This document shows, piece after piece, positions 2,734-64,000 of a stretch of 64,000 nt of DNA. The notes beneath the pieces were generated by a model, which was given only the letters and a program-made list of their open reading frames with translations, was not told where the DNA came from and searched no databases. This DNA is from Dimorphilus gyrociliatus. Taxonomy: Eukaryota > Animalia > Annelida. Numbering within the stretch: position 1 is the first letter of the stretch; the number at the start of each line of letters is the position of its first letter. The stretch covers positions 306,819 through 370,818 of the forward strand of contig CAJFCJ010000007.1 in the NCBI GenBank assembly GCA_904063045.1, written 5' to 3'. The position numbers were made by a program, and so were the translations under genes.

Positions 2734-4648
2734 ATGAAAAACATGAGTAATCGATTGCGATTAATATCCTTAATTCTTCTCATTTTCTGTTCTTCAATCA
2801 ACTGTAAAAGAAGTGAACAAAAATGCGAAGAAATCACAATTCCTCTCTGCGTTGGAATAGGTTACAATTTTACAAAAATGCCAAACCAGTTCAATCACAT
2901 GAGTCAACATGAAGCTGGTCTGGAGGCTCACCAATTTATCCCTCTGGTGAAAATTGATTGCTCTCCATATTTAAAATTTCTTTTATGCTCTATGTATGTT
3001 CCAATTTGCCTGAAAAATTATCATAAACCTTTACCAGCTTGCCGGAGTGTTTGTTTAAAAGCTCGAAGAGGATGTGAACCTATTATGGAAAGGGTGAGTT
3101 TGGATAAGAGTAAACATAGTATATGTAGTGTTCAATAGATATGCGTGTATACACAGTGTATCCGTTTATGCGCATTTAGTATCCCTAAATACGAAAGAGT
3201 CCATTAACGGTTTATAGTGAAGTGTGCTAAACCGATGATTGTCATTAGGCGCTTAGAAAGGAAGTTGACTTAGTGGTACAATGACGCCACTAACGAGCAA
3301 TGACGTAACCGCCTACTCGTCTAAATGTTCCGGCACTAAACCGATCTTGACCTACTAACCTAATTCTTTTCTCCTTTTCCACTTGAAACAGTATGGATTC
3401 TTCTGGCCGAAGAGAATGGATTGCAACAAATTACCTGTCCACGGAGACACCAAAAACCTGTGCATGCCATACAACGTAACAGAGCCACGCAGGAAACCCG
3501 AAAACTGTCCGTGCAGGTGCAGTGGTTCCTATGTTCCAATAACCAGTAAAAGGAGTATTTTATATAACCAAGTGCGCACTGGAGGAGTTTTAAATTGTGC
3601 TGAATCGTGTCATTCTGCTTTTTTTAAGGATGACGAAAAAACTTTTGCTTCATTTTGGATAGGCTTATGGGGAGCCCTTTGTTGTATTTCCACCCTCATG
3701 ACGGTCAGTACGTTTCTCGTCGATAGAGATCGTTTTCGTTACCCTGAGAGACCAATTGTTTTTTTGTCGGCGTCCTATTTACTTGTTTCTATTGGATACT
3801 TAATTCGGTTAATTGTTGGACACGAAAAGATTGCATGCGATGGAAATGTATTAAGATATGGTTCTACTGGTCCAGCTTTATGCACAGCCGTTTTCTTTCT
3901 TACATACGCTGGAGCAAATGCTGCCTCTGTTTGGTGGGTTATACTTACTTTCACCTGGTTCCTTGCCGCAGGTATTAAATGGGGTCAGGAAGCGATATCG
4001 AGTTACTCTACTTATTTCCATATAACGGCATGGTTCATTCCAATTGCTCAAACCATTGCTGTTCTCTCATTGTCTTTGATCGACGGAGATCCAGTTGCTG
4101 GCATTTGCTCTGTTGGTAATACTTCTTTAGCTTCATTTAGAGGTTTTCTCCTTGCGCCTCAACTCGTCTACTTGATGCTCGGATCTGTCTTTCTTCTAGC
4201 TGGTTTTATGTCATTATTTAGAATACGATCCGTCATCAAAGCTCAAGGACGTTCTAGAACTGATAAACTTGAGAAATTAATGATCAGAATTGGAGTGTTT
4301 AGCGTCCTCTATACATTGCCAGCAGCCACTGTAATAGGTTGTTTATTCTACGAAGAAAGAGAACGGCTGAATTGGCAGAGGTCAATTAATTGCGACTGTA
4401 TTAAGAGGAAGCAACCAGATTTCTCAGTGTTTATGCTTAAATATTTTATGCAACTAGTTGTAGGTACGACTTCCGGATTTTGGATTTGGACTAGTAAGAC
4501 CTTAGACAGTTGGAGAAAATGTTTAACTCATGCCTTCTGCTGGAGAAGACGAAGGGAATTAAGAGAAGGAAGTGTACGAAGTGAAGCAAAATACGCCCCC
4601 TATCGTGCTAATCAAGTAAAATTGTTAACGCCTTTAACGAACGTTTGA
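2734..4648 (+). CDS. FZD5/8: Frizzled 5/8 Wnt receptor, 538 aa, 2 exons
   Basis: join(2734..3093,3392..4648); intron GTGAGT...CAG, phase 0, restores CEPIMER-YGFFWP. Signal peptide, cysteine-rich domain typical of Fz5/8 (CEEITIPLCVGIGYNFTKMPNQFNH...EAGLEAHQF), 7TM region, KTxxxW motif (KTLDSW) and PDZ-type C-terminus LTNV. Confidence 0.96.
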
Positions 4649-46333: not shown

Positions 46334-46767
46334 TATATTCGTATATGTCTTTTTTCTTTTATTAAACTCTTTACTAAATTCATATTTGTATCTCATTTCT
46401 ATTAAAGTCTCTAAGTGCACATAAGATGTAACTATTTTCTCTATATTTAACTAATTTTCAATGTAGAATACAGCCAGAATTTTCTCATATTGCTTTTATC
46501 TGCCCTCTCTCTCTCTGCCGTTGTGCTTTTTCTAGCTCATTTTTTCCCTTTCTCTCTCTACCTTTCTTTCTTTCATTCTCTTTATTTTCAGTACAGGTAT
46601 ATACTTTTTTAGTGTATAAAACAATAAATGCATATACATCAAAGTTGAAAAACTACGAAAATAATGACAAAAAGATCAAAATAACTTTTTTTTTATAACA
46701 AAACAAAAATAAAAATAAAGGTAACACGCTTAGAAAGAGAATTTATAAGAACATTATAGAATTTCAC

Positions 46768-46781
46768 CCACTAGATGTCGT
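46768..46781 (+). promoter_or_regulatory. CTCF-like motif CCACTAGATGTCGT
   Basis: Near-consensus core between the receptor pair and the CAP/fibrocystin-L locus. Confidence 0.4.
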
Positions 46782-47309
46782 ATAATCGAATTATATGTTA
46801 TCTGATGAATCTAAAGCCCTTATAATTACTATTTTATTTAGCTAGGACATTGGTCTTTAATTATATTATAAAAAACAAACTACTCTTAAAACGAGTTTAT
46901 GTTGTCAGCATTTAAAAAAGAATTCTATTATTAGGTGACCTCTATTTCAAGAACTTCAAACTTTTTATTTTTACTGTTAAAATTGTTTATTACAGTTATT
47001 TTCTCACAGTTTTCCCTAATTTGCATTCACGTCAAACGAGACAAAAAGGATAGAGTTCAATAAAAATTTCCCTAAGCCGTCTATCGTTAGCTTTGCTAAA
47101 TATGAAAAGACTTCATTTATCTTAATCATAGATCATAGGTTCTGGATTAATGTAGAATAAAACTAACAAATCCTACCAATGTTTATTGTTAATAAAGGAA
47201 CATTATGGTTTGATCTGAATGGTGATTGGCTAAAACGCCCTTCGAGATTACCATATTAATTGAGAACTTTAACATTTTCCCTTAGATTTAGTAGTCACGT
47301 CTAAGAGGC

Positions 47310-48153
47310 ATGACAAAAACTTTTCAAAACCTCTTGATACTTTTTCTAATAGGTGATTTTTTCTTCTTTTATTTTAAATTTATCTTTTTTCAAACTATCA
47401 GTTCTATATAGTTATTTTGTAATTCATCCTTTTCAGGAGTATCAAATGGATCTATTTCCTCGCTTTTACCATCTGGTGATCAAGATTTGGTTGTAGCAAG
47501 AATTAATCATTTTAGAAGAAATGCAGGATCATCTGATATGCAAAAAATTGCCTGGGATGGAGATTTAGCAAGTTCCGCTCAAGAACAAGCCAACCGTTGT
47601 TCTGAAATACAAGATTCAAAAGTATTTGCCTTTTCTTCAATTTCTTCAGTTGAAAATGCTGTGAAGGCATGGTTTGATGAAAAAGGAAATTTTGATGGAA
47701 ATTCTTGCAATTGCCGAGTAGGAGCAAAATGTCAAAATTATATTAAAGTTACAACAGCAAAAACCGTAAAAGTTGGCTGTGGTAGACAAACATGCTCTAA
47801 TTTATATGAAGATAGCACAAGAACCTCAGTCATAAAGAATAATGTCGAGTTTCTTGTTTGTAAATTTGAAAAACCGTAAGTTAAAAAAGTTACAAGCAAT
47901 GCACTTTGTGAGCAATTTCTTTAATATTTTTTTTACTTTAGAGCTATAGAGAATAATTGTCCCTTTAAAAAGGGAAAAGAATGCTCAGAATGTCCAAGCG
48001 GAAGGGAGAGATGCGTTGAGAAGTTATGTCAAGGTAAATTGAAAAGAATAAATGCAATTTTTAAATTTAATATGTTTTTTGAAAACAAGCTTACATTATT
48101 TGCTTATTTCAGCGTCCTGCGCAAAAGGAGAAGAGGGTGAAGGCTGCCGTTAG
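47310..48153 (+). CDS. Secreted CAP (SCP/PR-1) domain module; stand-alone 204-aa protein or N-terminus of fibrocystin-L
   Basis: join(47310..47352,47437..47875,47942..48033,48113..48153). Signal-like MTKTFQNLLILFLIG; CAP hallmarks INHFRR, MQKIAWDGDLASSAQ, AVKAWFDE, KVGCG and LVCKF; Cys-rich hinge CSECP...C...LC. The last exon holds a GTTAGT donor at 48149 overlapping the stop. Confidence 0.85.
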
Positions 48154-48420
48154 TAAAATTTATTGACATATTCATCGTTGTTTATTGATCAATAGAACGT
48201 GATAATCACTAAGGATCTGTAATTTTTGGATTTATCCTATTGTTCCTAATCCTAGTAATCCATTAATAACCAACTAACTATTTAATGTAAATAATCCTTG
48301 CATAATTATTACAGGATTAGTTAACATTTTGCGTTGCCTAAACAAAAAGAAAAATCTTATTCATTATTTTGAAATGTATTCAATAGCGTTACTTTCATTG
48401 TATTTAATTCTTTTTCATAG

Positions 48421-51400
48421 ACATCGAACCAAAAGTTACACATATTCAACCGCAAAAAGGTTCTTTAAATGGTGGAACACGAATTACGATTTTTGGAAAA
48501 GGTCCATATTTAATATTTTTTTTTTCCAAATTTGATAAATATGTTATCAATTATCTCTTATTTATAGGGTTTTCCCAGGATCGATTCAATTTTGGTGCAA
48601 ATAGAGAATCGTTAGGTAATAAAGTGACTCTAATATCTGCAGTGGGAAGCCATACTTGCGATATTCATATTGATGGCTGTACCGAATTTCAAATTACTTG
48701 CTATACTAGGTTGTTTTATAAAATATGTATATATATACAGTGTATATGCACATTTCATTTTTTATTGTCTATTAGAAAAATGCCCGCCGGAAGTTATTTT
48801 GTACGTATCGAGGTTGATGGAAAAGCAGTAACTGATGAAAATCACTGTGGAGATGCTGATGCTTCAGGTTTGCTTATAAATTAGATTTTAGATCACGTAT
48901 GTTAGTTAGCTATATAAAAATTAAAATTATAAATATCTTGCAAGAGATTACTTTTAGTCTCGTCATTGAAGCAACTTTTTCTTACTAGACATACATTTAT
49001 ACGTTTTAAATTACTTATTTATAAGGACTACTTCAGGGATTTAGCTTAGCTCATAATAATAAGAAATAGAAAAAACATTTTGTTAATTTTTACTAATCTC
49101 CGTTACAAAAGGAGCTGCATTTTAAGTATGATAAAAGACATTTTGAATGTGTATTATGTCATAAGTTCTAAGAATACTCTAAATTCTGTTCTAGTTTATT
49201 CTGAATTAATCATTTTCGATTTTCACAGACTGCAAATTTACAACTCTTCAAGATAAAACACCAACAATAGAGTCAATAGAGAGACATACACAAACACCTC
49301 GTCAATTTATTAAGATGAGAGGTGTCATTGGTACAGCTTATAGAGGAAGTACTATACTTACCGAGAATAGTACAAATGGCGAAACCGATAGATTTACTAG
49401 AATGTGGGCATGCGGGCGCGAATGTATTATGGAAAATGAAAACGGCGATGTGTTAGTTTTTATTCAGAGCTTATTTATAAAATATTAATAAAATAATCTA
49501 TTATTATACTTGTAGCCATAAATTAGAATTAGATGGTGATGGAACAGGCAAATATGGCTCGGTTTGGTGTGAACACCAAGGGAATTTTGTCGGTTTGTAG
49601 ACTTAATAAAGTGTTTTAATTTTCTATATGTATTTTATACTTAAATTAGGACTTTGTAATGTAAGTTCACTGATTGAAGGAAGTTGGGGAAGATCTCTAA
49701 CCAAGACACACTTGTTGAGGGTTTCTCATGATGATAGAATTTATACTCTTCAAACCTATGCTGTAATAGAGAGTATCTCCCCAAATGAGGGATCTGAATC
49801 GGGTTCAACCTATATTACTATATCTGGAAACTATTTTGATCCAAAAACATCAAGTGTTAAAGTTAGTGATGAAAATTGTGCCATCGTTAGCATTACTAAT
49901 AATGAGATTATTTGTAAAACGTCACCAAAACCTGCTTCCTTACCATCTAAATTCCCCGGAAATCGGGGTCTACTCAGAAGCACTTGGGAAGGAGAAAATA
50001 AAAATTTTGCTAATTTAGATGATATAGACTCTCTCTCAAACCCAACATATACCAACTGGACAGATGAAACTTATTATAAAGAAATTGAAAAAAATACATA
50101 TGTTACTAAAACGGTTGGTTATTTCATAGCCCCTGCAGACTCTGACTATGTTCTCAAAGCCAAAGGGGACGATTTTCTTAAAGTTTATCTTAGTAAAGAT
50201 GACACAGATCCTTCATCCCTGGTGAGTAAATTATCTTCATTAATACTACTCACGACTCGTGAATAACGTTCTTTCTTTTAGGAATTAATGTCCCAAGTTG
50301 TGACAGCAACAGACAGTTTCAATACAAATCCAGAGCAAATTAGCTCGAAATTTACATTAGAGAAGGGTAAAGCTTACGCTATCAAAATAGTTCATGCCGA
50401 AGGCAGTTCAGCGGCTAAAATTGCTGTTGGAATTCACTCTATGAGTACGGTTTTTAACGAAGGTCAAAATGCCTGGGCAAAAGACGAAGTCCAAATTATA
50501 AAAACAACAAGTACTGTCCGACCCGAAATACAGACATTAGATATGTCTAGTTTCCCAGCTTCTCAAACTGCAACTTCCGAAGTTCAATCTTGTGTAATTG
50601 ACATATCATCCGAAGAAATTCCTTTCAGATTAAAGTACAATAATTTACCAACAGGTAAGAGTTTATTAATAATCTCTAAATAGAAGAGTATTAATTTTTC
50701 TTTCATATCTTTTTTATAGAACTTTTATCAAAGCTCTCAACTGCAAACGATGTGAAAAATAAACTTAAGAAATTGTCGACAATTGCAGCCGAAAATATAA
50801 ATCTTGATGTAACTGTTGCTAGTGACGCTACCACGTTTACTATAACTGTCACATTTAATTCTGAATTGGGTTCTCATCCACAATTGGAATTGGTCACGGC
50901 ACCGGAGTATTCAGGAAATGTATCAATGGTTGTAACAAAAACAACAGCGGGAGTATCAGGAAATGAAAAATTTAGATTACAATATGCCGATCAAGTGTCT
51001 CCTGTAATACCTGTTGGAGCGAACGCAGAGAAGGTGAATAGATTAAAAACTAATCTCTTTCTTACTATAACAAAGACAAATCCCTAAAATTAGGTTAAAG
51101 AGGCCGTTGAAACTCTATTTTCTGTTAAATGTTCCAAGAAACTTACAGAAAATTCAGCCTTAGAATTTGATGAGTTTGAAAGTTCAAGTGAGTCAGCTGA
51201 AGTCGTACCATTTTGTGGCAGACGATCTAGAAAGAACCCCTATATATTATTTTCTTCGACAAAAAGACCTATATCAATTAACAGCAATCCTATTGTAAGT
51301 CATATATCGAAAATATTTGAATTTTTAGACAATAATTAAAACTCTATGTTTTACAGTTCTGTACTGCTTATAAAGGAAACTTTTTATCAAGACTTCAGGT

Positions 51401-54400
51401 TAAATACATTTACCCAGACAATGGTAAATCCTCAACACGATTTAGAAATATAAAATTTGATTTGAGTGATAATAGCGGAAAGTAATTAGCGTTTTATCTT
51501 AATAATATATCAATGATTAAGTTATGAGATATTATTATAATATCCATTTTAATCTTTTTTCAGTTGGAACTATAATTGCGTAAACATATTAGAGTATCTT
51601 AAGGCTAGACACATTGGCGTCACTATATTTAGAGCGCAGCTAATTCGCATTAATCCTATGGATTCTGAATCATATATTGATATTCCTTATCTTGGTCCAG
51701 AAAAACCAGCTGGTGAAGAAAATCGTAAGTTTGACTTAACTACTATTGGCTACTTTTTAGAGCAATAAATAATAATTCTGTAATTTTATAGCTACAAATT
51801 TAAGAGGAGTTCCAGCCTTCGTTGCTGATGAAGTAACAGTCAATGAAACTGCTTCAGGAATTTACGAGATATCAATTATGCCTCGCAATTGCTTCAATAA
51901 TTTACAATTATTATCTGTGGCCAGCGCAGCCCCTGCAGATTTCACAGTTACACAGGAACAAGCTGCTGGCGTTCCTCCCTCAGGTGAATTCACAATCAGC
52001 TGGGATGGAAAGACCACAGGTAGGCGAAATATAAATCTAGTATTAAAAATTCAATAGCTGAGAACAAATTAAAATAACAACTATATCTTGTTTTTAGTTG
52101 TTAAGGCTGACTACACTGAAAGAGAAATGAATGATCAATTAGAAACTTTAAGTGGTATTCAAGATGTAAAAGTTACAAGAACAGGCAAATGTAGTGGCTA
52201 CGAATGGAGAGTACAATTCCTTACTTATCATGGAGATGCCCCAGATATGACTGTTTGTAAAATATTCCATATTTACCATAATTATATTAATTTATTTTAA
52301 AGATATCGGACCATTCAAGTTTACAAGGTACGGACGCAGCTGCTAGTATAGTACAGGGAAGGAATGGAGGTATTTTTTACTACCCTATCCCAGGTGATAT
52401 GCTTAGGACAATGCATGATCTACCTCAAGTAATTATAAACTTATTGAATTTCTATGCTTTAATCTTGATTTAATTTTTAAATGAAGACTTTATGGAATAT
52501 ATTTTTCAGGTGACAGTCGATGTGAATAATGTTCCTTCAAGATGTGCAGGAAATTGCGACTTTCAATGGAGTAGCGCGATAAATCCAACAGCTTCGGGTA
52601 TTACTCCCACAACAGGCACATCCGGAACAGCAGTTACCATTGCTGGCACTGGTTTTTCAACCACTCCATCTATGAATGTCGTCCTCATTGGTGATTCAGA
52701 ATGCTCTATCACAACATCAACAGAAACCGAGATACAGTGTACAGTAGCTGATGGTGCACTTGGTAGCCAAGATGTTCAAGTTATTGTTAAAGATAAAGGC
52801 CTTGCGACTTCATCTATGATCTTTGATTATACTGCAGCTGTTTCAAGTATTTCTCCTACAAGTGGAAGTATCGGTGGAGGTTTAGTATTGACTGTCACCG
52901 GAAAAGGCTTTCAAGATGGAGACATTGTTAAAATAGGAGCAGTAGAATGTCCTGGTATAGCCTTGACTTTCTCGACAATAACGTGTAAAGTACCTGCCAG
53001 AGCTGTAAGTAACAATTAAACAACTTTTCTAAATAAGTATATAAACATTATTGTTTTATTAAATAGGCAGGAGCTGGCCAGGAAACTGTTACAGTGGAAA
53101 ATAGTGGCTCTCCAATAACAGGTAGCGCAACTTTCGACTATACTGAAGCCGATTCAATATTAATAACTGCCATTGACCTAACACAGGCAAATGCCTTTGG
53201 TAAGAAAATATTTTATACTTTTAAGAATATACTCAAAAATTGACTGTCACTTAAATTTAGGAGGCGAAGAGGTTACAATTGATTCAACAGTTGGACCCTT
53301 TGGATTCAATCCTCGTAAAGTTTTCGTAGGAGATCATGAAACAACAATATTAAAGTATTCGAACACACAAATTAAAATTAGATTACCATCTTTACCAAAT
53401 GGAGAGCATACTTTATATATTCGAGGTGCACATGGATATGCTATTTTAGAGTTCGTAACTTCTATACCTTTATCATATTTAGATAAAAACACATAATTCT
53501 TTCACAGTGCCACTAAAGCTCTTCCAAAAATAACAGTGCAGTTTGAAGTTACAGCAGTTTCGACAGATAAATGCTCCAGCTATGGTGGTTGTAGAATAAC
53601 TTTAACTGGAGTAGGCTTTAATACTGATTGCTCAAAGAATAAGATTACATATGAGGATTCAGTATGCAAACCGACATCTTGTTCTGACACTTCTGTGGAG
53701 TGTACTTTAGAATATGCTGCATTTGTTCATAGAATAACTAATAATGGTATCAATCCTGCTCTGGGTAAGAAATTTGCCTGGGACCCAAAAAATATTGAAA
53801 TTATGATGGGTGATATCATTTCTTGGTCTTGGGATCCACCAAAATTTGTCAGAAAAGTCAATTATAGAGTTGCTGAAACTGAAACGGACACAAGCTCAGT
53901 CCCAAAAGTTGGAGGTTTTTCAAGCGGACCAAATGGAAGTCCTACTGGATCCTATAGAAAGCACTTTCCCACTGTTGGAAATTATAAATACTTCTCCGGT
54001 TACGTTGATGAAGAAGGAACTATTGCTTTTAGAGGATGGGTGAACGTAGTTGCAAGAGAACCTTTTGTTTTATATCTTTCTTTTTATCAAGGATCTGCGG
54101 AAGCCACATATACATTAGGTGAGATTTTAAATAAGTTATTCTTTAAAAAAAACACAATCTCTTTCATTTTTAGGTGGAGCTGGAAAAAGAAAGAAGAGAT
54201 CAGCTTGTTCAGTAAAATCCTGTTCTGATCCTGACCCGACAGTATCTGATGCAACAAAATTTCCTTTGAAAATGTTAACGTGCTTAGATAGTGAAATTGA
54301 TAGCATAACTCCATCTGAAGGTACAGCCGCAGATACGTTAACCATAACTGGAAGCGGATTCGGCACAACTGATTCCTGCGTAACTGTAGAAGTCGGACAA

Positions 54401-57400
54401 AAGACTTGTACAGTCAAATCCATTACTGATACACAGATAACATGTATTATAGATCCTGGAAACGATATGAAAATTGGTGAACAGCATTATGTTAGAGTTT
54501 ACGTTCATGAAAATGGCTATTCGCAAAATAAGCAAGATTATACTTTCTCCTACTCGCTTAGTCCACACATTGCCTCTATAACACCTACATCTGGTTCACT
54601 TGCTGGAAATAATAAAATAACAATTACGGGAGCCGGGTTTACAACAGACACTGTTGAAGTAAAACTCGGCCTAGTCACTTGTGAAATAGAATCTGTCTCA
54701 TATACAGAAATTGTATGTATTTCACCTCTTAAAGCCTCAGCATCGACTGAGACAGTATCGGTAACTGTTGGAGGATTTCCAGCTATTTGCAAAGCAAGTG
54801 GAGACGTATGCACCTACGAATACTCGGCAGCTTCAACTCCAGAAATAACGGCCATAAATCCTACATCTGGAGGAGCATCAACTACAATAACTATTACTGG
54901 TTCTAATTTCGGTACAAATAAAGATGATCTATCTCTAAAAGTTGGGGAAGCTGATTGTATTCCAAAAGATGGTTTAACTGATACTCAGGTTGAATGTGAT
55001 TTAGCTGCTTCAGCAGTAGGAGCAAACTCTTTGGCTCTTGAAAAAGTAAATGCTGGCTCTGCTATTGTCGGAAACAGTGTAAGTTTCAGTGGAACGCCAA
55101 CTTTGGATTCGGTAAATCCGACAACTGGCTCTGCAAATGGAGGAACCATAATAACCCTTATAGGAAATGGATTTTCAGCTGATATTTCAATAAGAATTGC
55201 TGGTCAAGATTGTGTCTTAAAATCTAGAACTCTTTCAAGAGTGACTTGTGTTACCCCTCCCTTCATTGCGATGACAGTTACAATCAAAATAACAAGCGGA
55301 TCAACAGAATTTCCAGATATAAACTATGAGTATACAGATTTGGCTACCCCAATCGTCTCGTCAATAAATCCAACAACTGGAACTGGAGGAGATGCCCTGA
55401 CAATAACTGGGAGTGACTTTAATACAGATGCAGCTACAAACGCAGTTACAGTTGGTGGATTAGCTTGTCCAATTACTGGAACACCAACAGCAACAGAAAT
55501 TATATGCACAGTTGATGCAAGTTTAGGTGGAGGAAGTCATCCTGTCAAAGTTGATGTTGACGGAAAAGGTCTTGCAACCAGTTCAGCTTCTTTTGTAATT
55601 ACGTTTGAGATAACAGGAATCGTACCAGCAGATGGAAGTCTTGCTGGCGGTCAAACTTTGACTATTAATGGTGCTGGTTTCAAATCAAGTGACATAGTTA
55701 CTATTTGTAACCAACCATGCCCCATTGAAGCATCATCAAGCAGTCAAATTACTTGTATAACACCTCCCTCTTCCACAGCTCAAACATGTCAGGTTGTTGT
55801 AAACTCAGGAGCTAGCCAAATACAAGATAACTATGACTACTCATCGGCAAAAACTCCTACAATTTCAAACGTTCAACCAAAAAGAGGAGGAACAGCGGGT
55901 GGAACATCTGTAACTATATCTGGCACCGGCTTTGGAACAGTATCGGGTGATGTTACAGTTTCAATGAATGGAATTGAATGGACAGTTGATAACGTGACTG
56001 ATACTGAAGTAATTTGTCGAACTGCAGCTGTTGATAAGCCTGTTGGTCCAGAAAGAACAGGTCGAAATAAAATAAGATTGTTGATTTCTGCTAAAGGAAT
56101 TGCAGATCAAGTAAGTGAACTGCACTGTTTTAAAATCTTAAGATTACTTATTTCTCATTTTGTACAATAGACGAATGCCGATTTCGAATTTATTGATGTT
56201 TGGTCAAGCACATTTACTTGGGGAGGAGCTGATCCTCCAGAAGAAGGTACTTTAGTTGTTATCCCAGCAGGTCAAACTATTTTGCTTGATCAATCAACAC
56301 CTAAGCTAAAGATGCTTCTTATTCAAGGTAATAATAGATATTTTTAGTTATACTTCTTATAAGGAAACCTAACAATTGCAATAAACTTAAAAGGTGGCAG
56401 TGTAATTTTTGACGAAGTTGACTTAGAACTGAAAGCAGAGAATATTCTCATCACTGATGGTGGTTTGCTACAAGTTGGTACTGAAGAAGAGCCTTTCCAA
56501 CACAAAGCCATTATTACAATGTATGGTTTTGTTAGGAGTCCAGAATTACCAATTTATGGTGCAAAAACTTTGGCTCTAAGAGATGGCAGTCTAGAGTTGC
56601 ATGGCAAAAAAGTTAAGCCATGGACAGTTCTTGAACAAAATGCAGCAGCCGGATCTAGTACAATAGTGCTCAAGCATCCTTGCGATTGGAAACCAGATGA
56701 CACGATTATTATTGCTTCTACAGGAGGTCACATGTCTCAAAGAGAAACAGAAACAAGAAAAATCGCTGCCATATCGGCTGATAAACGCACAATAACTCTA
56801 GACGCCCCTCTTACTTATTCACATAGAGGGGAAACCCAAACGTTCGATGGAACTGCTCTAGAAGTGAGAGCCGAAGTAGGTGTTCTGGATCGTAATGTTG
56901 TCGTAAGAGGAAATAATGATATTCAATGGAATGATAAAATTGAAGCATGCCCTGATGGATTCGATCCAGGAGAGCATGCCACTCAAACTTGCTTCCAAGG
57001 AAGATTTGGAGAAGAAGTAGGCAGTGATCAATTTGGATCTCAAATAATGATTCATCAAAATGATCTTAACGCTAATAAAGTTAAAGTCAGGATGGAGTAT
57101 GTGGAAGTAACCTATTCTGGTCAGGCTTTCCGATTAGGTAGATACTCAGTTCATTTCCACTTAAACGGCGACATGACAGGCTCATATGTAAGAGGTTGCT
57201 CTATTCATGATACCTTTAATAGAGCTATAAACATTCACAACACCCACAATTTATTGATTGAACACAACTTGATATTCAATGTGATGGGAGGAGCAATGTT
57301 TTTAGAAGATTCTATTGAACATGGAAATATTTTCCAATATAACCTTGCCGTTAAAGTTCGCTCTTCATCGTCTCTGCTCAACGATGATATCACTCCTGCC

Positions 57401-60400
57401 GCTTTTTGGATAACCAATCCCAATAATATTGTGAGACATAATCATGTAGCTGCTGGAACCCACTTTGGATTTTGGTACAGAATGCTTAAGCATCCTGATG
57501 GGCCTAGTTTCGATCCAACTATTTGTCCTCAACATGTTCCGCTTGGAGAATTCAATAATAACACTGTCCATTCTGTTGGATGGTATGGTTTATGGGTCTT
57601 TGAGGATTATTATCCAACTCTTGAGGGGAATTGTGGTCCTACAAAGACTCCAATTAAAGCCAAATTTACAGGATTAAAGGCTTGGAATAATTTGAGGGGA
57701 CTTGAATTTGTTCATGCAGGAGCTTTGCAAGCCCATGACGGAATATTTGCCAACAACTTAAAGGCAGGCATTGAGATTCTTCATATCTTTAGACACCATG
57801 GAGAGGTTGAGTTCTTTTCGGAAGAAGGAGCTTTGTTGAAGAACAATGTTATAATCTCACATTTAGAGCACACGGATAGAGCTCCCTGCACAAAGAGGGG
57901 TTTAGTTCTACCTTTTGGTAGCGGTCTTTTGATAGATGGTCTTAAATTTGTAAATTTCGATGGCGAACAAGTTTTTTCTCATACTTGCTCAGCTATTGGA
58001 ACAGTAAAGATTACCTGCACATGTACAAAGTTGTGTTCTGGCTATGACTATCAATTTAAGAATGTAAAATGGGTCAATTCTATTAAGAAAGCGTTTTTCG
58101 AATGGGAACATCAGGCGGAACTCACTGATTTAGACGGCTCTTTAACAGGAACGAATAATGCAAAAGCAATTGCAAAATCAAATCTGATGCCCTCAAGTAA
58201 ATGTTCAGATAGCCCCGAATTTTCCGTAAATTTTCCCGGACAAATATGTACTGATATAGATATTTTAAAACTGAATTTGAATGAAGTACAACCTGTCTCT
58301 CTTTTGTATAAGTCAATATACATTGAAAATGAGTATGGAAATTCTATCGTTCCTTACGCTTCCGAGAGAGATATTTATAAAAAAGGCTGGATGATTTTAA
58401 TTCCTGCAGGACACCTTCATAAATTTTATTTTATTGATGGTGCACATATAAGTAATTTCACCTATGAAGCTCAGTTTGATGGACTAACGAACAATGCCTA
58501 TGCCATTATTCAACATAACTTAACAGAGCCATCATTTGACGAAGTCAGTATTCTAAAAGACCCTGTTGACGGAGTTACTTATGATTTGACAAGACAAGTG
58601 TCATACGACACAGATAAAAATGGAATGTTCTATTGGGATGAATCAAAACTAGAATTAACTTACTTGATTTCTGATAAACCAGGCCCAGTTCCTCGTTTTA
58701 CCAGACAAATTAAATTAGTAGCAACTAATTGTCTCTATGAAGGATGTGTGAATCCTTCTTCGGTCGACATTCCCTTAGATACAAAGAGACCTGCGACCGC
58801 AGTATTCTGGAGCGATCTCAAGAGTTGGGAGAATATGCCTACAGGTTATGCAGGTGGTAATCAACTCCCACAAACTGGACAAAAAGTTATAATACCTAAG
58901 GATATGTGGATGGTTGTTGATGTTGAAGTAATTGACCTTCTTTGGATTGAGGTTTACGGCACATTAGAATTCGAGTACAAACCTAAATCTGATGGATCTT
59001 ATTATTCAATTTCTGTTACTACTACTTATATTTTTGTAAAAGGTGGTAGACTTATTGCTGGTTGGCCAAATGATCCATTCCAAGGAAATCTCAATTTACA
59101 ATTTAGAGGTTCTCATGAGACTCCGAAATTCCCTCTCCAAGAGGACGGGCCAACAGCTGGCAACAAAGTTCTAGCAGTTTTCGGAGGTCTGGATTTGATT
59201 GGTAAAAATCGAACTGTTTACTGGACAACTCTGAAATCTCCTGCTGCCGCTGGTGATAGCAAACTCATTTTGTCTAGAGCCGTAGATTGGGTTGTTGGAG
59301 AAGAAATTGTTGTAGCTCCCACAGGCTTTGATGTAAAACATACTGAAACATTCACAATTACCGGAGTATCACCAGACCAAACGGAAATTACACTAAACGG
59401 AACTCTTCAATTTGCTCATATAGCAAGTACTGAACAATATGGTAGCCAAGTAATACAAATTGCCGCTGAAGTTGGTCTTCTGACAAGAAATATAAAAATT
59501 ATTGGTCTTGACAATGGCAATATGTTCAAACAAGCTTTTGGAGCAAGAGTTCTTGTTGGTATTACAAGTGGCATAAATGAGTTTGGAGAGATAGAAGCCC
59601 ATATCGGCTATGCAAGATTAAGAAATGTTGAATTCGCGTATACTGGACAAGAAGGATTTGTGGCTTCTTATGACCCTAGGCATTCTCTTTCGTTTGTACA
59701 TACGGGAGATGTTACAGAGAACAAACCTTCAGAAGTTATTGGCTGCTCGTTTCACAACGGATTTGCTACCGGAATCGCTTTATATTCAGCAAATAAAATG
59801 GTAATTGCAAATAACTTGATTCATCATGTTGTTCGAGAAGCCATTCTTGTAGAGGGAAATATGAACGAATTAATAGATAACTTAGTTGTTCAATCTTTGT
59901 TCCCTGGTACGTTTAACGATAGAAGGGAAAGCTCCAATATACTTTGGCACGCAGCTATTGACATAACTAAATCGTCTGGAACTAAACTGATAGGAAATCA
60001 TGTAGCTGGCTCAGAAAGAGCAGGCTTCCACACGCCTGGTCAGCCATGTGATACTCCTACGAGTGAATTGTGGAGAGATAATGCTGCTCATACTACAATT
60101 TTAGGTCTTTACCAAAGTCCCACTACACAATGTTCCGCTGGCTGCATCATATTTAATGGTTTTACTTTATATAAATCGAATGGATATGGCGTATACACTC
60201 AAACCAAATGTTCTGTAACATTTAATCGTGTGAAATTAGCAGATAATACAGTTGGAATACTCACTATGATCGTAGGACCCAAGTTGGATAACCATGAGTT
60301 CAAGGATTATAGAACAAAATATCATAATGGGTTGATTATTGGCAAATCAGCTTCATTCAACTGTGAAACTGACGTTAGAAATAAACAAGATTATAATATA

Positions 60401-63400
60401 AAATATGGCTCAGCAGGTTTAGGTTGGACCATTGGTGGAGGTTTTGTAGGAGTTTCATTCCCGTTGAGAACATCTGGCGGAAATCTTCATCCAAAGATGC
60501 CATTCAATTTGGCAAAAACAACTCCTGCATTTTACGGAATTATGGAAATAGAGAGTAAGTTCTTTATACTATTTATAACGGCTATTAGTAAATTACTTTA
60601 ATACTTTATAGATACTGAATTCGCAAGATTCCAAACAATGTGTAGTAATCAAAGAGACAGAATGATTGCTACAAACCCACGATCCATTGATGTTCAATGG
60701 ATTATTGAACTTAAACGCTGTTATAAACATTATGTTGATGAGGACTCCCTTGTACATTTCCATAAGCCAACTGGAGCATCTGCTGATGAATGTGTCGATA
60801 TGACCTGTGACGGAATGAAAAAACCTTTGTTGAGAATCATTGACGGAACTATAACTGAATCTTCAGGAGTCTTCTTTGCAGATTCAACAGTTGGGTACAA
60901 TACAGACAGATCTCAAGGTTTAGGAGATTATAGAATACCAAAAACAATGCTTACAGAAGTAGGCACTGGTAAAAGAATTCCCCCTGAGGAAATAAGATTT
61001 GGTGGATTAGGTATTATTAGAGATAGCACATGTCAACAAAAATCAAACGTTCCAGGATTTTTTTGTCCTTCAATTGACTATCATACTATGGTTTTCGAAA
61101 GTCTGGATGAAGATTCTAAAACCAGAAGAATAGGACCAATAGCCTTCCAATCAGATACTGGCTACTTAGATATGATTAATGGGCCAAGGGATGTAGGAAT
61201 TTGTGCTGGCTATGTTTGTAGACATAGATCGTCAGCATTTTGGTCTATTGTTAAATTAAATCATCAATATAACATCTACCTAACCGGTACAGCTCCACAG
61301 AGCCTTAGATTTCACTTGCCATACGTCAACTCACAAGAGACTATAAGAATAGCTTTCTATTACGGCTTAATGCAGAGATTAGATATTTCAGTTGATGGGG
61401 AATATATTCCTCCTAAAAATATCAAAGACCCAAATAATTATAATGATGGTTATATATCGAGCACTAACCCGAAACAGGACTTTATGCCAAGTTACTCAGA
61501 TCCATCCGGTACCAACTACTTTGATTCAGATGAAATGATAATATACTTCCTCATGAAGGGAAATAAACCCGTCGAGATATCCTTAAAACAAGTTGTTATT
61601 ATGCAATTTGGCGTTCCTCCGATGTCAGTAGCTGACTTTTATGGGAAGAATCTTGTACAGAATTTGGCCAATTTCCTTGGTATTCCTAAAGAAAAAATTC
61701 GTTACGTAAATGTAATATCTGAACTAGCTGCCAGTAGTCGAAAACGACGTAGTCTTCCAAATCTTAAAGTCATGATTCAAATAGGAGATCAGCCAGGCTC
61801 CAGCACTCTTCAATGGTCCCATCTCAATAATATCTACTCTCAAATTCAAGTTGCAATTCAAACTGGCGAATTAAATGCTGTTGTCGGTATCCAATTACAA
61901 AACGTTTCACTTAGTCCTGCAGTACCTAGCTCCGACAACCCTGATTGGCAAACATATATTAAGACAATAGAGAATGGAGGAACTCCAACAGCACCTATTG
62001 GTAAACCAGACAAAATTGTTATTAACGAATGCAATCCATTACACGAAGGTGCTGAGTTTACAGCAGTTGCAAAATTAGCAGACAGTGCAGGTTTTCTTGT
62101 TACAAATCTTGGAGGTACTTGGAAAATGAAAGTGGAAATCCGTCATGGCTCAACGGCTAATGCAAATACAAAAATCCTTGGTGAAACAATTGTTTCAGTC
62201 AGCTCGGGCTTCGCGGTATTTAGAAATTTAGCATTCTCACATTCTGGTGGTCCTTATTATTTGGATTTCTCGGTTGTTGAGCCAAGTAATTCAAATATTG
62301 CCAAAGTATCATCGAAGGAAATCAACTTAATATCAAGACCAATAACTTTAATATCTAAGAAGAGTGTTACGAGAGTAATTAAAGCAGAACCATTCCACTT
62401 TAAAATTGAATTGATGGATTCGGTAACGAAATCTAGAATTAGCAATGTTTCTTGGAAGGGTCAAAAATGGACTGCTAAAGCTCAATTAGCTAATATTCAC
62501 AAGTCACAGGCCTGGAGTACATCAGGGGAAGTAGAATTCGATAATAACGGCTACGCTATTGTACACAACATATTTAATTCAACTGGCTTTTTCGCTGTAA
62601 AAGTTATGGCTATCAGCAATGGAAATGAACTTGTTAAGGAGGAATTTGTGAGAGTCTTTGAAAAAACTCAGAAACCCGTTAAAGTAGATGTAACAAGACG
62701 ACTTACTCTAAAGTTTAAAAATGACTTTTCATCTGTTGCTGATCATCTGACATCATTTGCAGTAGTGTTAGCAAATCACGTCAGAAAAATTAAAGAAGAG
62801 GTAGAATTGAATAATTTTGCGTTTAGAGAAGGAAGTATTTTTGCTAACTTTTCGGTTGGTGGAGAGAATACAAATGTTAACGATGTCATAGAAACCTTAA
62901 AAAATCAAATCAAAAAGGGTTTTGCCCTAGATTTCAATAGCAAAAAATTCTCAGCTCACCCATACTTTTACGTTGATGGAAAAGTTGTTGATGAGCTTGA
63001 TGGGCAGGAAACAGAAAAAGAGGAATCTAGTTCCCTTAGTACGGGTGCTATTGTTGGAATTGCAGTTGGATGTGGAATTGGAGTATTTATTATTGTACTC
63101 CTTGTTGTCGTTATAGTTGTTGTAACTAAGAATTCTAAAAAAGGTAGCATAAACAAAGACCGAATAAATGACAGTCCCCCACCACCGTATATTGGAAATC
63201 AGCCGCCTTCCTTGACGAAATACGACGAAATCAAAGTTATACCTTCAAAAGAAAGACGGTAAGGCGATTAGAATAATTTTTTCATCCCTTTTATATAATT
63301 CTTTATAATTAACAGTGACACGGATGCTTCATATATTTCTGGAAAAGTGTCGAGTTCCTCTTTAAGTATAGGAACCTTTGGCCCGGACTCAAGACCTGGA

Positions 63401-63487
63401 AGCTCCAGAAATGAAATCGTAACAAGCTTAACTCCAAATCCTAGTAGAAGAGCATCAGCAGCTGCTGTGCCTACAGTAAATGAATAA
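48421..63487 (+). CDS. PKHD1L1: Fibrocystin-L (PKHD1L1-like) giant type I membrane protein
   Basis: 23 exons: 48421..48501, 48568..48709, 48776..48867, 49229..49451, 49516..49592, 49650..50221, 50282..50654, 50720..51033, 51094..51294, 51357..51481, 51564..51724, 51792..52019, 52098..52252, 52303..52428, 52510..53004, 53067..53199, 53261..53450, 53508..54118, 54174..56110, 56171..56327, 56394..60554, 60612..63258, 63316..63487; all phases compatible. N-terminal IPT (PKVTHIQPQKGSLNGGTRITIFG), PA14-like region, many IPT/TIG repeats, cupredoxin-like insert, two G8 domains with PbH1 beta-helix repeats, TM helix near 63047-63124 and a cytoplasmic tail. Confidence 0.95.
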
Positions 63488-64000
63488 AGTATTCTATATT
63501 TTGCCCTGCAGCTATAAAGATTTTAACAAGGAACTTATGAAAAACTTGAATATATATGATAAATATAAATTGTTATGTCGATATTAAATTTGAAAATCTC
63601 TAAAGTTATTGAACAGAAAATCAAATTTTATTTTTAAAAGAAAACAATAAGTTAATTTAACAATTAATATTTTCTCAGTCAATTGTTTCTGATTTTTGGT
63701 TAAAACCTCACTTGATATTTAGATAATACAAATACAGCATTTACACTATAAAAATCTGGTTTTAATTGTTCTTTTAAGTTACCAAAGATATTAAAATAAC
63801 AAGAGTTTATCTTCTGGAAAAGGATATGATATTGAAAAGTTACTTTTAGCAACGACCTGACTGTTGTTTTGCTTCTTTTTTTTTGGAATTTAATCAAAAA
63901 CTTTACTGATTTCACAGTAGATCTAATTCAAAAAGAAGAAGAGAGCAAACTCGCTTTAGCCTGATTCGTCTTCTTCTATTAGGAAAATGAAAAAGTATAG

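What the first reader, a model, noticed from the sequence alone, without database searches (positions are those of the whole stretch)
47310..48501. CAP domain spliced in frame onto fibrocystin-L: a probable CAP-PKHD1L1 fusion of ~4660 aa
The first fibrocystin-L exon (48421) starts in phase 1 after a good acceptor, and no in-frame ATG or signal exon lies in the 267 bp before it. The last CAP exon has a GTTAGT donor, a type used often in this window, at 48149 in phase 1, overlapping the apparent stop. Splicing 48148 to 48421 gives ...SCAKGEEGEGC-H-IEPKVTHIQP..., and all 27 exons total 13,983 nt, an exact open frame. CAP exons 1 and 3 also end in phase 1, so CAP-skipping isoforms are possible, and not splicing gives a free secreted 204-aa CAP protein. 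Vertebrate PKHD1 and PKHD1L1 begin directly with IPT domains. The CAP domain lacks the usual conserved His residues (QNYIK for GHYTQ), suggesting a lipid-binding or adhesive role at the tip of a giant surface or ciliary protein (inference).
Basis: partly seen in the sequence, partly recalled or inferred. Interest (0 to 1): 0.8.

Follow-up and report, generated by a model that had tools for sequence, protein, structure and literature searches.

The report
CAP domain fused onto fibrocystin-L
In the miniature marine worm Dimorphilus gyrociliatus, a CAP (CRISP/PR-1-type) domain is spliced in frame onto the tip of the giant surface protein fibrocystin-L; RNA contigs show the join, a related worm's genome keeps the same layout, and I found it in no other animal's fibrocystin-L.

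Summary
The four CAP exons (47310-48148) and the first TIG exon (48421) have the stated sites and phases. The 48148->48421 GT..AG join is present in spliced contigs of two independent runs. One is a 14,013-nt contig running from CAP exon 2 to the gene's 3' end. The other is an RNA-seq contig from a different strain.

A genomic contig of a relative (65-67% protein identity) has the same four CAP exons, with identical lengths (43/439/92/36 nt) and phases, upstream of its fibrocystin-L. It has no ATG that could start fibrocystin-L separately. The signal-peptide-like ATG at 48374 is therefore not conserved, and that rival falls.

The CAP and hinge coding sequence is under purifying selection (dN 0.37, dS about 1.8). 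No CAP domain appears in 62 N-terminally complete fibrocystin-L representatives or in about 240 further listed homologues.

The gene encodes signal peptide, tetrad-less CAP, GLIPR1/CRISP-like hinge, then canonical fibrocystin-L (about 4,650 aa, one C-terminal membrane helix). Isoform ratios, a free CAP product and the function of the head remain untested. The junction intron also holds an unexpectedly conserved non-coding block. The scan had not noted this gene before.

The parts
47310..47352 (+). Exon 1: start codon and signal peptide (MTKTFQNLLILFLI-), 43 nt, ends in phase 1
   Evidence: Sequence checked. The relative has a 43-nt exon in the same phase, 81% nt identical. The exon 1-exon 2 joint itself was not covered by any contig.
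47437..47875 (+). Exon 2: the entire CAP domain (PF00188), lacking the His residues of the CAP cavity tetrad
   Evidence: Pfam E=4e-11. PDB matches: PR-1 at 2e-8, SmVAL4 at 5e-7, GLIPR1, Pry1. The spliced contig X2 covers it from 47457. The relative's exon has the same length and is 52% aa identical.
47942..48033 (+). Exon 3: cysteine-rich hinge of GLIPR1/CRISP type (C-x7-C-x2-C-x6-C-x4-C)
   Evidence: Joints 47875->47942 and 48033->48113 are seen in the contigs. There is a weak match to the GLIPR1 C-terminal hinge, E=0.035. All Cys are conserved in the relative.
48113..48148 (+). Exon 4: end of the hinge (SCAKGEEGEGC), 36 nt, phase-1 donor GTTAGT; reading on unspliced meets a stop after one more codon
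   Evidence: The relative has a 36-nt exon with a phase-1 GTAAGT donor and a stop two codons into the intron.
48149..48420 (+). Junction intron (272 nt). Its first ~165 nt (48149-48313) are a conserved non-coding block with four TAATCC/GGATTA sites
   Evidence: It is removed in the contigs of X2 and X1. Identity to the relative is 70% overall and 77% for the first 165 nt, against 35-39% for the other introns. TAATCC cluster. No Rfam hit and no stable fold.
48421..48501 (+). First fibrocystin-L exon: the TIG domain starts three residues after the joint
   Evidence: Pfam TIG profile positions 1-23 align from residue 3 of the exon. The joints on both sides are observed.
48568..63487 (+). Remaining 21 exons of fibrocystin-L: TIG arrays, two G8, beta-helix regions, one membrane helix at about 63032-63125, about 100-aa tail, stop at 63485-63487
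   Evidence: Pfam on the large exons. Joints up to 52098 are observed; the rest are modelled. Hydropathy. The best named relatives are fibrocystin-L at 45-49% identity.
63583..63588 (+). Probable poly(A) signal ATTAAA, about 20 nt before the computed end of the 14,013-nt contig
   Evidence: computed from record coordinates and my exon model; inference.

Best explanation
This is one gene, not two. Exon 1 supplies the only start codon and signal peptide. Exons 2-4 encode a CAP domain followed by a short disulfide-rich hinge of the GLIPR1/CRISP kind. A phase-1 donor at 48148 is spliced to the phase-1 acceptor of the first TIG exon at 48421. The mature product is therefore a type I membrane protein of about 4,650 residues whose most distal element is a CAP head. 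The head sits on the canonical fibrocystin-L stalk (TIG arrays, G8, beta-helix), which ends in one membrane helix and a short tail. These steps are shown: the exons, the phases, the splice in RNA-derived contigs, conservation of the layout, and purifying selection on the head. Two steps are inferred. First, the CAP-hinge block is a symmetric phase 1-1 module of 567 nt, which was probably inserted into a pre-existing phase-1 intron between the signal-peptide exon and TIG1. Second, because the zinc-binding His residues of the CAP cavity are missing in both species, the head probably acts as a non-catalytic binding or adhesion module. A sterol or lipid ligand is plausible, as in tetrad-less CAP proteins. 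It would sit at the tip of a ciliary or microvillar coat protein.
For: The 48148->48421 GT..AG joint is in X2, a 14,013-nt fully spliced contig from 47457 in CAP exon 2 to the 3' end with 0 mismatches. It is also in X1, a run on record as RNA: a 488-nt contig that starts with an Illumina adapter at 47988 in CAP exon 3, runs into fibrocystin exon 4, and carries 3 SNPs. The frame stays open through all observed joints and through the 27-exon model. The relative's contig L001 has a CAP ORF directly upstream of its TIG/G8 exons. Its exons are 43/439/92/36 nt, its phases 1/2/1/1, and its TIG exon 1 has a phase-1 acceptor. L001's intron has no in-frame ATG upstream of TIG1, and the window has a stop four codons upstream. 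For CAP plus hinge, dN is 0.37 and dS about 1.8; codon positions 1/2/3 are 67/73/47% identical; all Cys are conserved. A search for a free-standing CAP protein of 80-254 aa resembling exon 2 found none. SmVAL4 and HpVAL-4 bind lipid or sterol without the tetrad (PMC4118828, PMC5893428, abstracts). PKHD1L1 is a stereocilia coat protein (PMC6707252, abstract).
Against: No contig covers the exon 1-exon 2 joint; the X2 contig starts 20 nt inside exon 2. Contigs are not single molecules and drop rare variants, so isoform ratios, CAP skipping and intron retention are all open. The kind of run X2 is not on record; it is taken as cDNA only because its contig lacks every intron. The organism behind L001 is unknown. 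No named non-dinophilid annelid fibrocystin-L was among the comparators, so the age of the fusion is not bounded. The AlphaFold model of the CAP exon was useless (pLDDT 35). All functional statements are inference.
Confidence: 0.85

Rival explanations
1. There are two independent genes, a secreted 204-aa CAP protein and fibrocystin-L. The joined RNA is an occasional read-through (conjoined) transcript or an assembly chimera.
For: The intron, at 272 nt, is four times the usual size. Reading on unspliced meets a stop right after the donor. Contigs cannot prove single molecules.
Against: The downstream part has no start codon or signal peptide of its own in either species. The joint sits exactly at GT..AG, preserves the frame, and appears in two studies. 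Exon lengths and phases are conserved across saturated synonymous divergence. The X2 contig runs through the joint without a break and none of the intron is covered. No free CAP protein was found in the protein collection.
Confidence: 0.04
2. A one-base assembly error in the T5 run at 48411-48415 hides the true fibrocystin-L start at ATG 48374, whose ORF (MYSIALLSLYLILF...) looks like a signal peptide.
For: The ORF is hydrophobic and would be in frame with TIG1 after a 1-nt change.
Against: The aligned stretch of the relative's intron has no ATG at all and is poorly conserved, 59% against 77% for the first part of the intron. The hydrophobic reading follows naturally from a T-rich polypyrimidine tract (inference). 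The acceptor at 48420/48421 is used in both runs. No contig covers 48374-48420.
Confidence: 0.03
3. It is one gene, but exons 2-4 are an optional cassette. The main product joins exon 1 directly to 48421, giving signal peptide then TIG as in other animals, and the CAP-bearing form is a minor or stage-specific isoform.
For: Exon 1 ends in phase 1 and 48421 accepts phase 1, in both species, so skipping preserves the frame. The conserved intronic block could regulate such a choice.
Against: Both runs assembled the CAP-containing path into TIG exon 1, and the high-depth X2 contig shows no branch at 48421. The CAP-hinge is under purifying selection.
Confidence: 0.12

Closest known systems
Fibrocystin-L (PKHD1L1) of other animals
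   Same: TIG arrays, two G8 domains, CEMIP-type beta-helix, a single C-terminal membrane helix. The G8/beta-helix exon is 45-49% identical to proteins named fibrocystin-L in molluscs, brachiopods, nemerteans, hemichordates and fish.
   Different: Other animals' proteins go from the signal peptide straight into TIG1. None of the 62 N-termini scanned has CAP, and none of the listed homologues carries PF00188. The cytoplasmic tail here is about 100 aa, against 9 aa reported for human FPC-L (PMC13424714).
GLIPR1 and CRISP-type CAP proteins (CAP domain plus Cys-rich hinge)
   Same: A CAP domain is followed by a P-[FY]-K-x-G-x-x-C-x-x-C-P...C...L-C hinge. Exon 3 aligns to GLIPR1 residues 169-191 and exon 2 to the GLIPR1 CAP domain.
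   Different: Those are small secreted or singly anchored proteins. Here the hinge leads, three residues later, into a ~4,450-aa TIG/G8 stalk. The match to the hinge is weak (E=0.035).
SmVAL4 / HpVAL-4, CAP proteins without the His/Glu cavity tetrad
   Same: The CAP1-motif His is replaced: 'KNYKQ' in SmVAL4 and 'QNYIK' here. Both known proteins bind lipid or sterol without the tetrad (PMC4118828, PMC5893428).
   Different: They are free secreted helminth proteins. Binding by the Dimorphilus head has not been tested.
Amphioxus fibrocystin-L-like isoform X2 with an N-terminal Kringle domain
   Same: A small disulfide-rich module (Kringle, residues 24-101) sits between the signal peptide and the TIG array. 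This is an independent case of a head added at the same place.
   Different: The module family differs. It is known only as an automatic isoform prediction, and I did not check its transcripts.
Plexin/Met ectodomains (Sema head, PSI knot, IPT stalk)
   Same: By general knowledge, they have a globular ligand-binding head, then a small Cys-rich knot, then IPT/TIG repeats. This is an analogous build, not homology.
   Different: The head fold differs (beta-propeller against CAP alpha-beta-alpha sandwich). No PSI match was found here.

Membership tests
CAP superfamily (PF00188) | Profile match above the curated threshold | tested here: met
   44.2 bits against a cut-off of 21.1, E=4e-11, profile positions 2-117 of 117. 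The relative's exon scores 48.8 bits. PDB PR-1 matches at E=2e-8.
CAP superfamily (PF00188) | CAP cavity tetrad (two His, two Glu) that binds divalent cations | tested here: not met
   The CAP1-motif His is Asn in both species (QNYIK, QNFLK). The CAP3-motif His is present in the window (NHFRR) but is Glu in the relative (NEFRG). No GEN-type Glu motif is seen. The tetrad is a feature of many members but not all; SmVAL4 lacks it.
CAP superfamily (PF00188) | Alpha-beta-alpha sandwich fold | tested here: inconclusive
   AlphaFold2 on a two-sequence alignment gave mean pLDDT 34.6, which is unusable.
CRISP/GLIPR1-type hinge | Conserved Cys pattern directly after the CAP domain | tested here: inconclusive
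   Only one weak PDB match, to the GLIPR1 hinge (E=0.035). There is no Pfam model hit. All Cys are conserved between the two species.
Fibrocystin-L / PKHD1L1 | TIG arrays plus G8 domains plus beta-helix regions in one polypeptide | tested here: met
   TIG E=3e-100 with 7 stretches in a single exon; G8 with 2 stretches; CEMIP beta-helix with 2 stretches. One spliced contig spans them.
Fibrocystin-L / PKHD1L1 | Closest relatives are annotated fibrocystin-L | tested here: met
   The top named hits are fibrocystin-L-like of Lingula, Haliotis, Tubulanus, Argopecten, Branchiostoma and Glandiceps.
Fibrocystin-L / PKHD1L1 | Signal peptide followed directly by the first TIG domain | tested here: not met
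   About 190 residues of CAP plus hinge lie between the signal peptide and TIG1. This is the point of difference.
Fibrocystin-L / PKHD1L1 | Single-pass type I membrane topology | tested here: met
   There is one hydrophobic 21-mer window above 2.0, at model residues about 4520-4550, and an N-terminal signal-like exon. This rests on hydropathy only.
True single-gene fusion (as against conjoined transcripts) | Splice joint present in RNA, and no independent start for the downstream part | tested here: met
   The joint is seen in two studies. Neither species has an in-frame ATG in the intron.
True single-gene fusion (as against conjoined transcripts) | One molecule running from exon 1 to the last exon | not testable with these tools
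Only contigs were available.

The most novel reading that the evidence does not exclude
The gene may have two outputs. If the junction intron is spliced, the CAP head is tethered to the giant membrane stalk. If it is retained or the transcript ends within it, a stop one or two codons past the donor (conserved in both species) would release a free secreted CAP-hinge protein. The strongly conserved 165-nt block at the 5' end of that intron, with its cluster of TAATCC (Otx/Pitx-type) sites, would be the control element. The worm could then switch between a soluble factor and its surface-anchored form, as B cells do with secreted and membrane IgM.
Probability: 0.12. Interest if true: 0.7.

Novelty: new variant of a known kind. 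Interest (0 to 1): 0.55.

Why it matters
Fibrocystin-L is ancient and is needed for hearing in vertebrates. It is the closest relative of the polycystic kidney disease protein fibrocystin. What its huge ectodomain binds is unknown. A lineage in which selection has kept a recognisable binding module at its distal tip offers a natural experiment. It suggests that the N-terminal tip is the business end of the protein, and it gives a small, expressible domain whose ligand can be looked for. The Kringle-headed amphioxus form adds to this: the intron between the signal peptide and TIG1 may be a recurrent site for adding modules. It is also a clean case of a phase 1-1 domain insertion, backed by RNA contigs, in a compact genome reported to lack operons and trans-splicing.

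Tried and rejected
1. A word search with CAP exon 2 alone found nothing at E<=0.001, so no free-standing orthologue could be named.

2. A scan of JGI metagenome contigs with the two-species CAP alignment gave 264 pattern matches, none confirmed.

3. Literature searches for PKHD1L1 plus 'CAP domain', and for the run accession behind L001, found no papers.

4. The AlphaFold2 model of the CAP exon had pLDDT 35, so no fold search was run.

5. I tested whether the conserved intron block is a structured RNA. Rfam gave no match and folding z-scores were -0.96 and -0.52. Rejected.

6. I looked for a canonical poly(A) signal in the junction intron. Only AGTAAA, which overlaps the donor, is shared by both species; ATTAAA occurs in the relative alone. 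This gives no support for intronic polyadenylation.

7. My first greedy exon chain (24 exons) skipped small exons. It was replaced by the dynamic-programming chain (27 exons).

8. I could not retrieve the public annotation's own protein for this gene. Its length puts it outside the length range of every by-reference query I could make, and it was not among the 120 rows listed.

9. The joined protein model was used only inside local scripts, for the frame check and for tblastn against L001 and L002. It was never handed to a database, look-up or folding tool.
Full report
**What is in the sequence.** The window is AT-rich eukaryotic DNA with introns of about 60-80 nt. I did not test that name directly. 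The intron sizes fit the published median of 66 bp, and the same paper reports no operons or trans-splicing in this worm (PMC7854359).

I recomputed the CAP exons:
- Exon 1, 47310-47352: 43 nt, ends in phase 1.
- Exon 2, 47437-47875: 439 nt, ends in phase 2.
- Exon 3, 47942-48033: 92 nt, ends in phase 1.
- Exon 4, 48113-48148: 36 nt, ends in phase 1, followed by donor GTTAGT.

Reading on unspliced from exon 4 meets a stop after one more codon. The next coding exon starts at 48421 after ...TCATAG, in phase 1, and the join reads ...EGEGC-H-IEPKVTHIQP.... Exon 2 is a bona fide CAP domain (PF00188, E=4e-11; PR-1, SmVAL4, GLIPR1 and Pry1 in the PDB). The downstream exons carry TIG arrays, two G8 domains and CEMIP-type beta-helices. 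The TIG profile begins three residues after the joint.

**Is the join real?** I laid the two available runs on 46500-52400.
- Run X2 holds one fully spliced 14,013-nt contig with no mismatches. It starts at 47457 inside CAP exon 2, crosses 47875->47942, 48033->48113 and 48148->48421, and runs on through every later intron to the 3' end.
- Run X1 is on record as metatranscriptomic RNA-seq of a coral sample. It holds a 488-nt contig that begins with an Illumina adapter at 47988 in CAP exon 3. It crosses the same 48033->48113 and 48148->48421 joints and continues into the fourth fibrocystin exon. It carries three single-base differences, so it comes from another strain or a sibling lineage.

The joint is thus exact, canonical (GT..AG), frame-preserving, and seen in two studies. 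The intron itself has no contig coverage.

With the 16 observed joints the frame is open for 3,199 nt. Extending by dynamic programming gives 27 exons, 13,956 nt and 4,651 residues. With my model the contig would end about 20 nt after an ATTAAA at 63583. Hydropathy shows one membrane helix near residue 4520 and a tail of about 100 residues.

**Conservation.** A search of the representative library with the G8/beta-helix exon returned one close relative, P0001 (65-67% identity). All other hits were at 49% or less. P0001 is encoded on L001, a 17.7-kb genomic Logan contig, and that contig has a CAP ORF directly upstream of the TIG exons.

Exon by exon, L001 has the same structure:
- A 43-nt start exon (81% nt identity).
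- A 439-nt CAP exon (52% aa identity).
- A 92-nt hinge exon.
- A 36-nt exon with a phase-1 GTAAGT donor.
- A 268-nt intron.
- A phase-1 TIG exon.

Synonymous sites between the two species are saturated (dS about 1.8) while dN is 0.37. Third codon positions are the least conserved (47%, against 67% and 73% for positions 1 and 2). Every cysteine of the CAP and hinge is kept. The head is therefore a selected part of the protein, not a passenger.

**The rivals.** L001's intron has no ATG in frame with TIG1, and the window has a stop four codons upstream of 48421. In neither species, then, can fibrocystin-L get a start codon or signal peptide except from exon 1.

The attractive 'MYSIALLSLYLILF' ORF at 48374 is one base out of frame. 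It lies in the T-rich tract before the acceptor. The aligned stretch of L001 has no ATG, and that part of the intron is the less conserved part (59%). I read it as a by-product of composition, not a relic start.

A search for a free CAP protein of 80-254 aa resembling exon 2 found none. The cassette idea stays open: exon 1 joined directly to 48421 preserves the frame in both species. But both runs assembled the CAP-containing path, and the deep X2 contig does not branch at 48421.

**How unusual is the architecture?** Full-length relatives start with a signal peptide followed at once by TIG1.
- phmmer with the CAP exon found nothing in the 150 representatives.
- Pfam on the first 450 residues of 62 N-terminally complete ones gave TIG (53), PA14 (30), Kringle (1) and no CAP.
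- None of the 120 full-length proteins listed carries PF00188, nor does any of the 120 mostly partial ones.
- No paper in the library combines PKHD1L1 with 'CAP domain'.

Two caveats apply. The named comparators are molluscs, brachiopods, nemerteans, crustaceans, a rotifer relative and deuterostomes. No named non-dinophilid annelid was among them, so the insertion cannot be dated. I also could not retrieve the public annotation's own model of this gene.

Two pieces of context help. The same samples that gave L001 also hold a second fibrocystin-L-like gene (L002/L003, 48% identity). It has no CAP in the 2.1 kb upstream, and its first TIG exon also has a phase-1 acceptor. An amphioxus fibrocystin-L isoform has a Kringle domain at residues 24-101, ahead of its TIGs. 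The intron between the signal peptide and TIG1 therefore looks like a place where phase 1-1 modules can be added. The CAP-hinge block (567 nt, phase 1 to phase 1) fits that rule (inference).

**What the head may do.** PR-1 'RHYTQV' aligns with 'QNYIKV' here and 'QNFLKA' in the relative. The other tetrad His is present in the window but is Glu in the relative, and no GEN-type Glu motif is seen. Metal binding in the CAP cavity is therefore unlikely.

The same region of SmVAL4 reads 'KNYKQM'. SmVAL4 and HpVAL-4 lack the tetrad yet bind lipid or sterol (PMC4118828, PMC5893428). Exon 3 resembles the GLIPR1 hinge (E=0.035).

Vertebrate PKHD1L1 forms the stereocilia surface coat (PMC6707252). My best reading is a non-catalytic binding or adhesive head at the distal tip of a ciliary or microvillar coat protein. 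This is inference.

**A by-product: a conserved block in the junction intron.** The junction intron is 70% identical between the two species, and 77% over its first 165 nt. The other three introns are 35-39% identical and the coding exons 62-65%. The block holds four TAATCC/GGATTA sites within 73 nt, while the whole 64-kb window has 33. From those counts I expect about 0.04 sites in 73 nt. Three of the four are conserved in L001.

The block is non-coding, with stops in all frames. It has no Rfam match and no stable fold. An intronic enhancer or a splicing control element is the likeliest reading. This supports the low-probability 'two-output gene' idea but does not show it.

The joined model exists only in local scripts.

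**Verdict.** This is a new variant of a known kind: a lineage-specific domain accretion on fibrocystin-L. Interest is moderate.

Noticed in passing
window 48149-48313 (L001 1765-1931): A conserved non-coding block lies at the 5' end of the CAP-to-TIG intron. It is 77% identical to the relative, against 35-39% for neighbouring introns. It has four TAATCC/GGATTA (K50 homeodomain-type) sites within 73 nt, no Rfam hit and no stable RNA fold.
   Followed up: partly
L002 1-16000 and L003 (same samples as L001): A second fibrocystin-L-like gene (48% identity in the G8 exon) has no CAP domain in the 2.1 kb upstream of its first TIG exon. That exon also has a phase-1 acceptor. It is either a paralogue without the head or a gene of another organism in the sample.
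   Followed up: partly
P0197 residues 24-101; P0056 residues 182-255: A Kringle domain sits ahead of the TIG array in an amphioxus fibrocystin-L-like isoform and in an unnamed ENA protein. This is an independent N-terminal head on the same family. Precomputed Pfam lists also show FN2 domains in rotifer models and cadherin domains in a Nematostella model.
   Followed up: partly
window 47988-52400, run X1: A coral metatranscriptome run holds transcripts 95-99% identical to this worm's gene. A Dimorphilus-like annelid was therefore living in, or contaminating, that coral sample.
   Followed up: no
window 48868-49228: A second oversized intron (361 nt, against the usual ~65) follows the third fibrocystin exon. 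The genome paper links oversized introns to open chromatin. I did not examine it.
   Followed up: no
window 47357-47403, run X2: A separate X2 contig (90-95% alike) matched the T-rich first intron with a back-joint and 255-nt loose ends on both sides. It is probably a low-complexity match from another locus.
   Followed up: no
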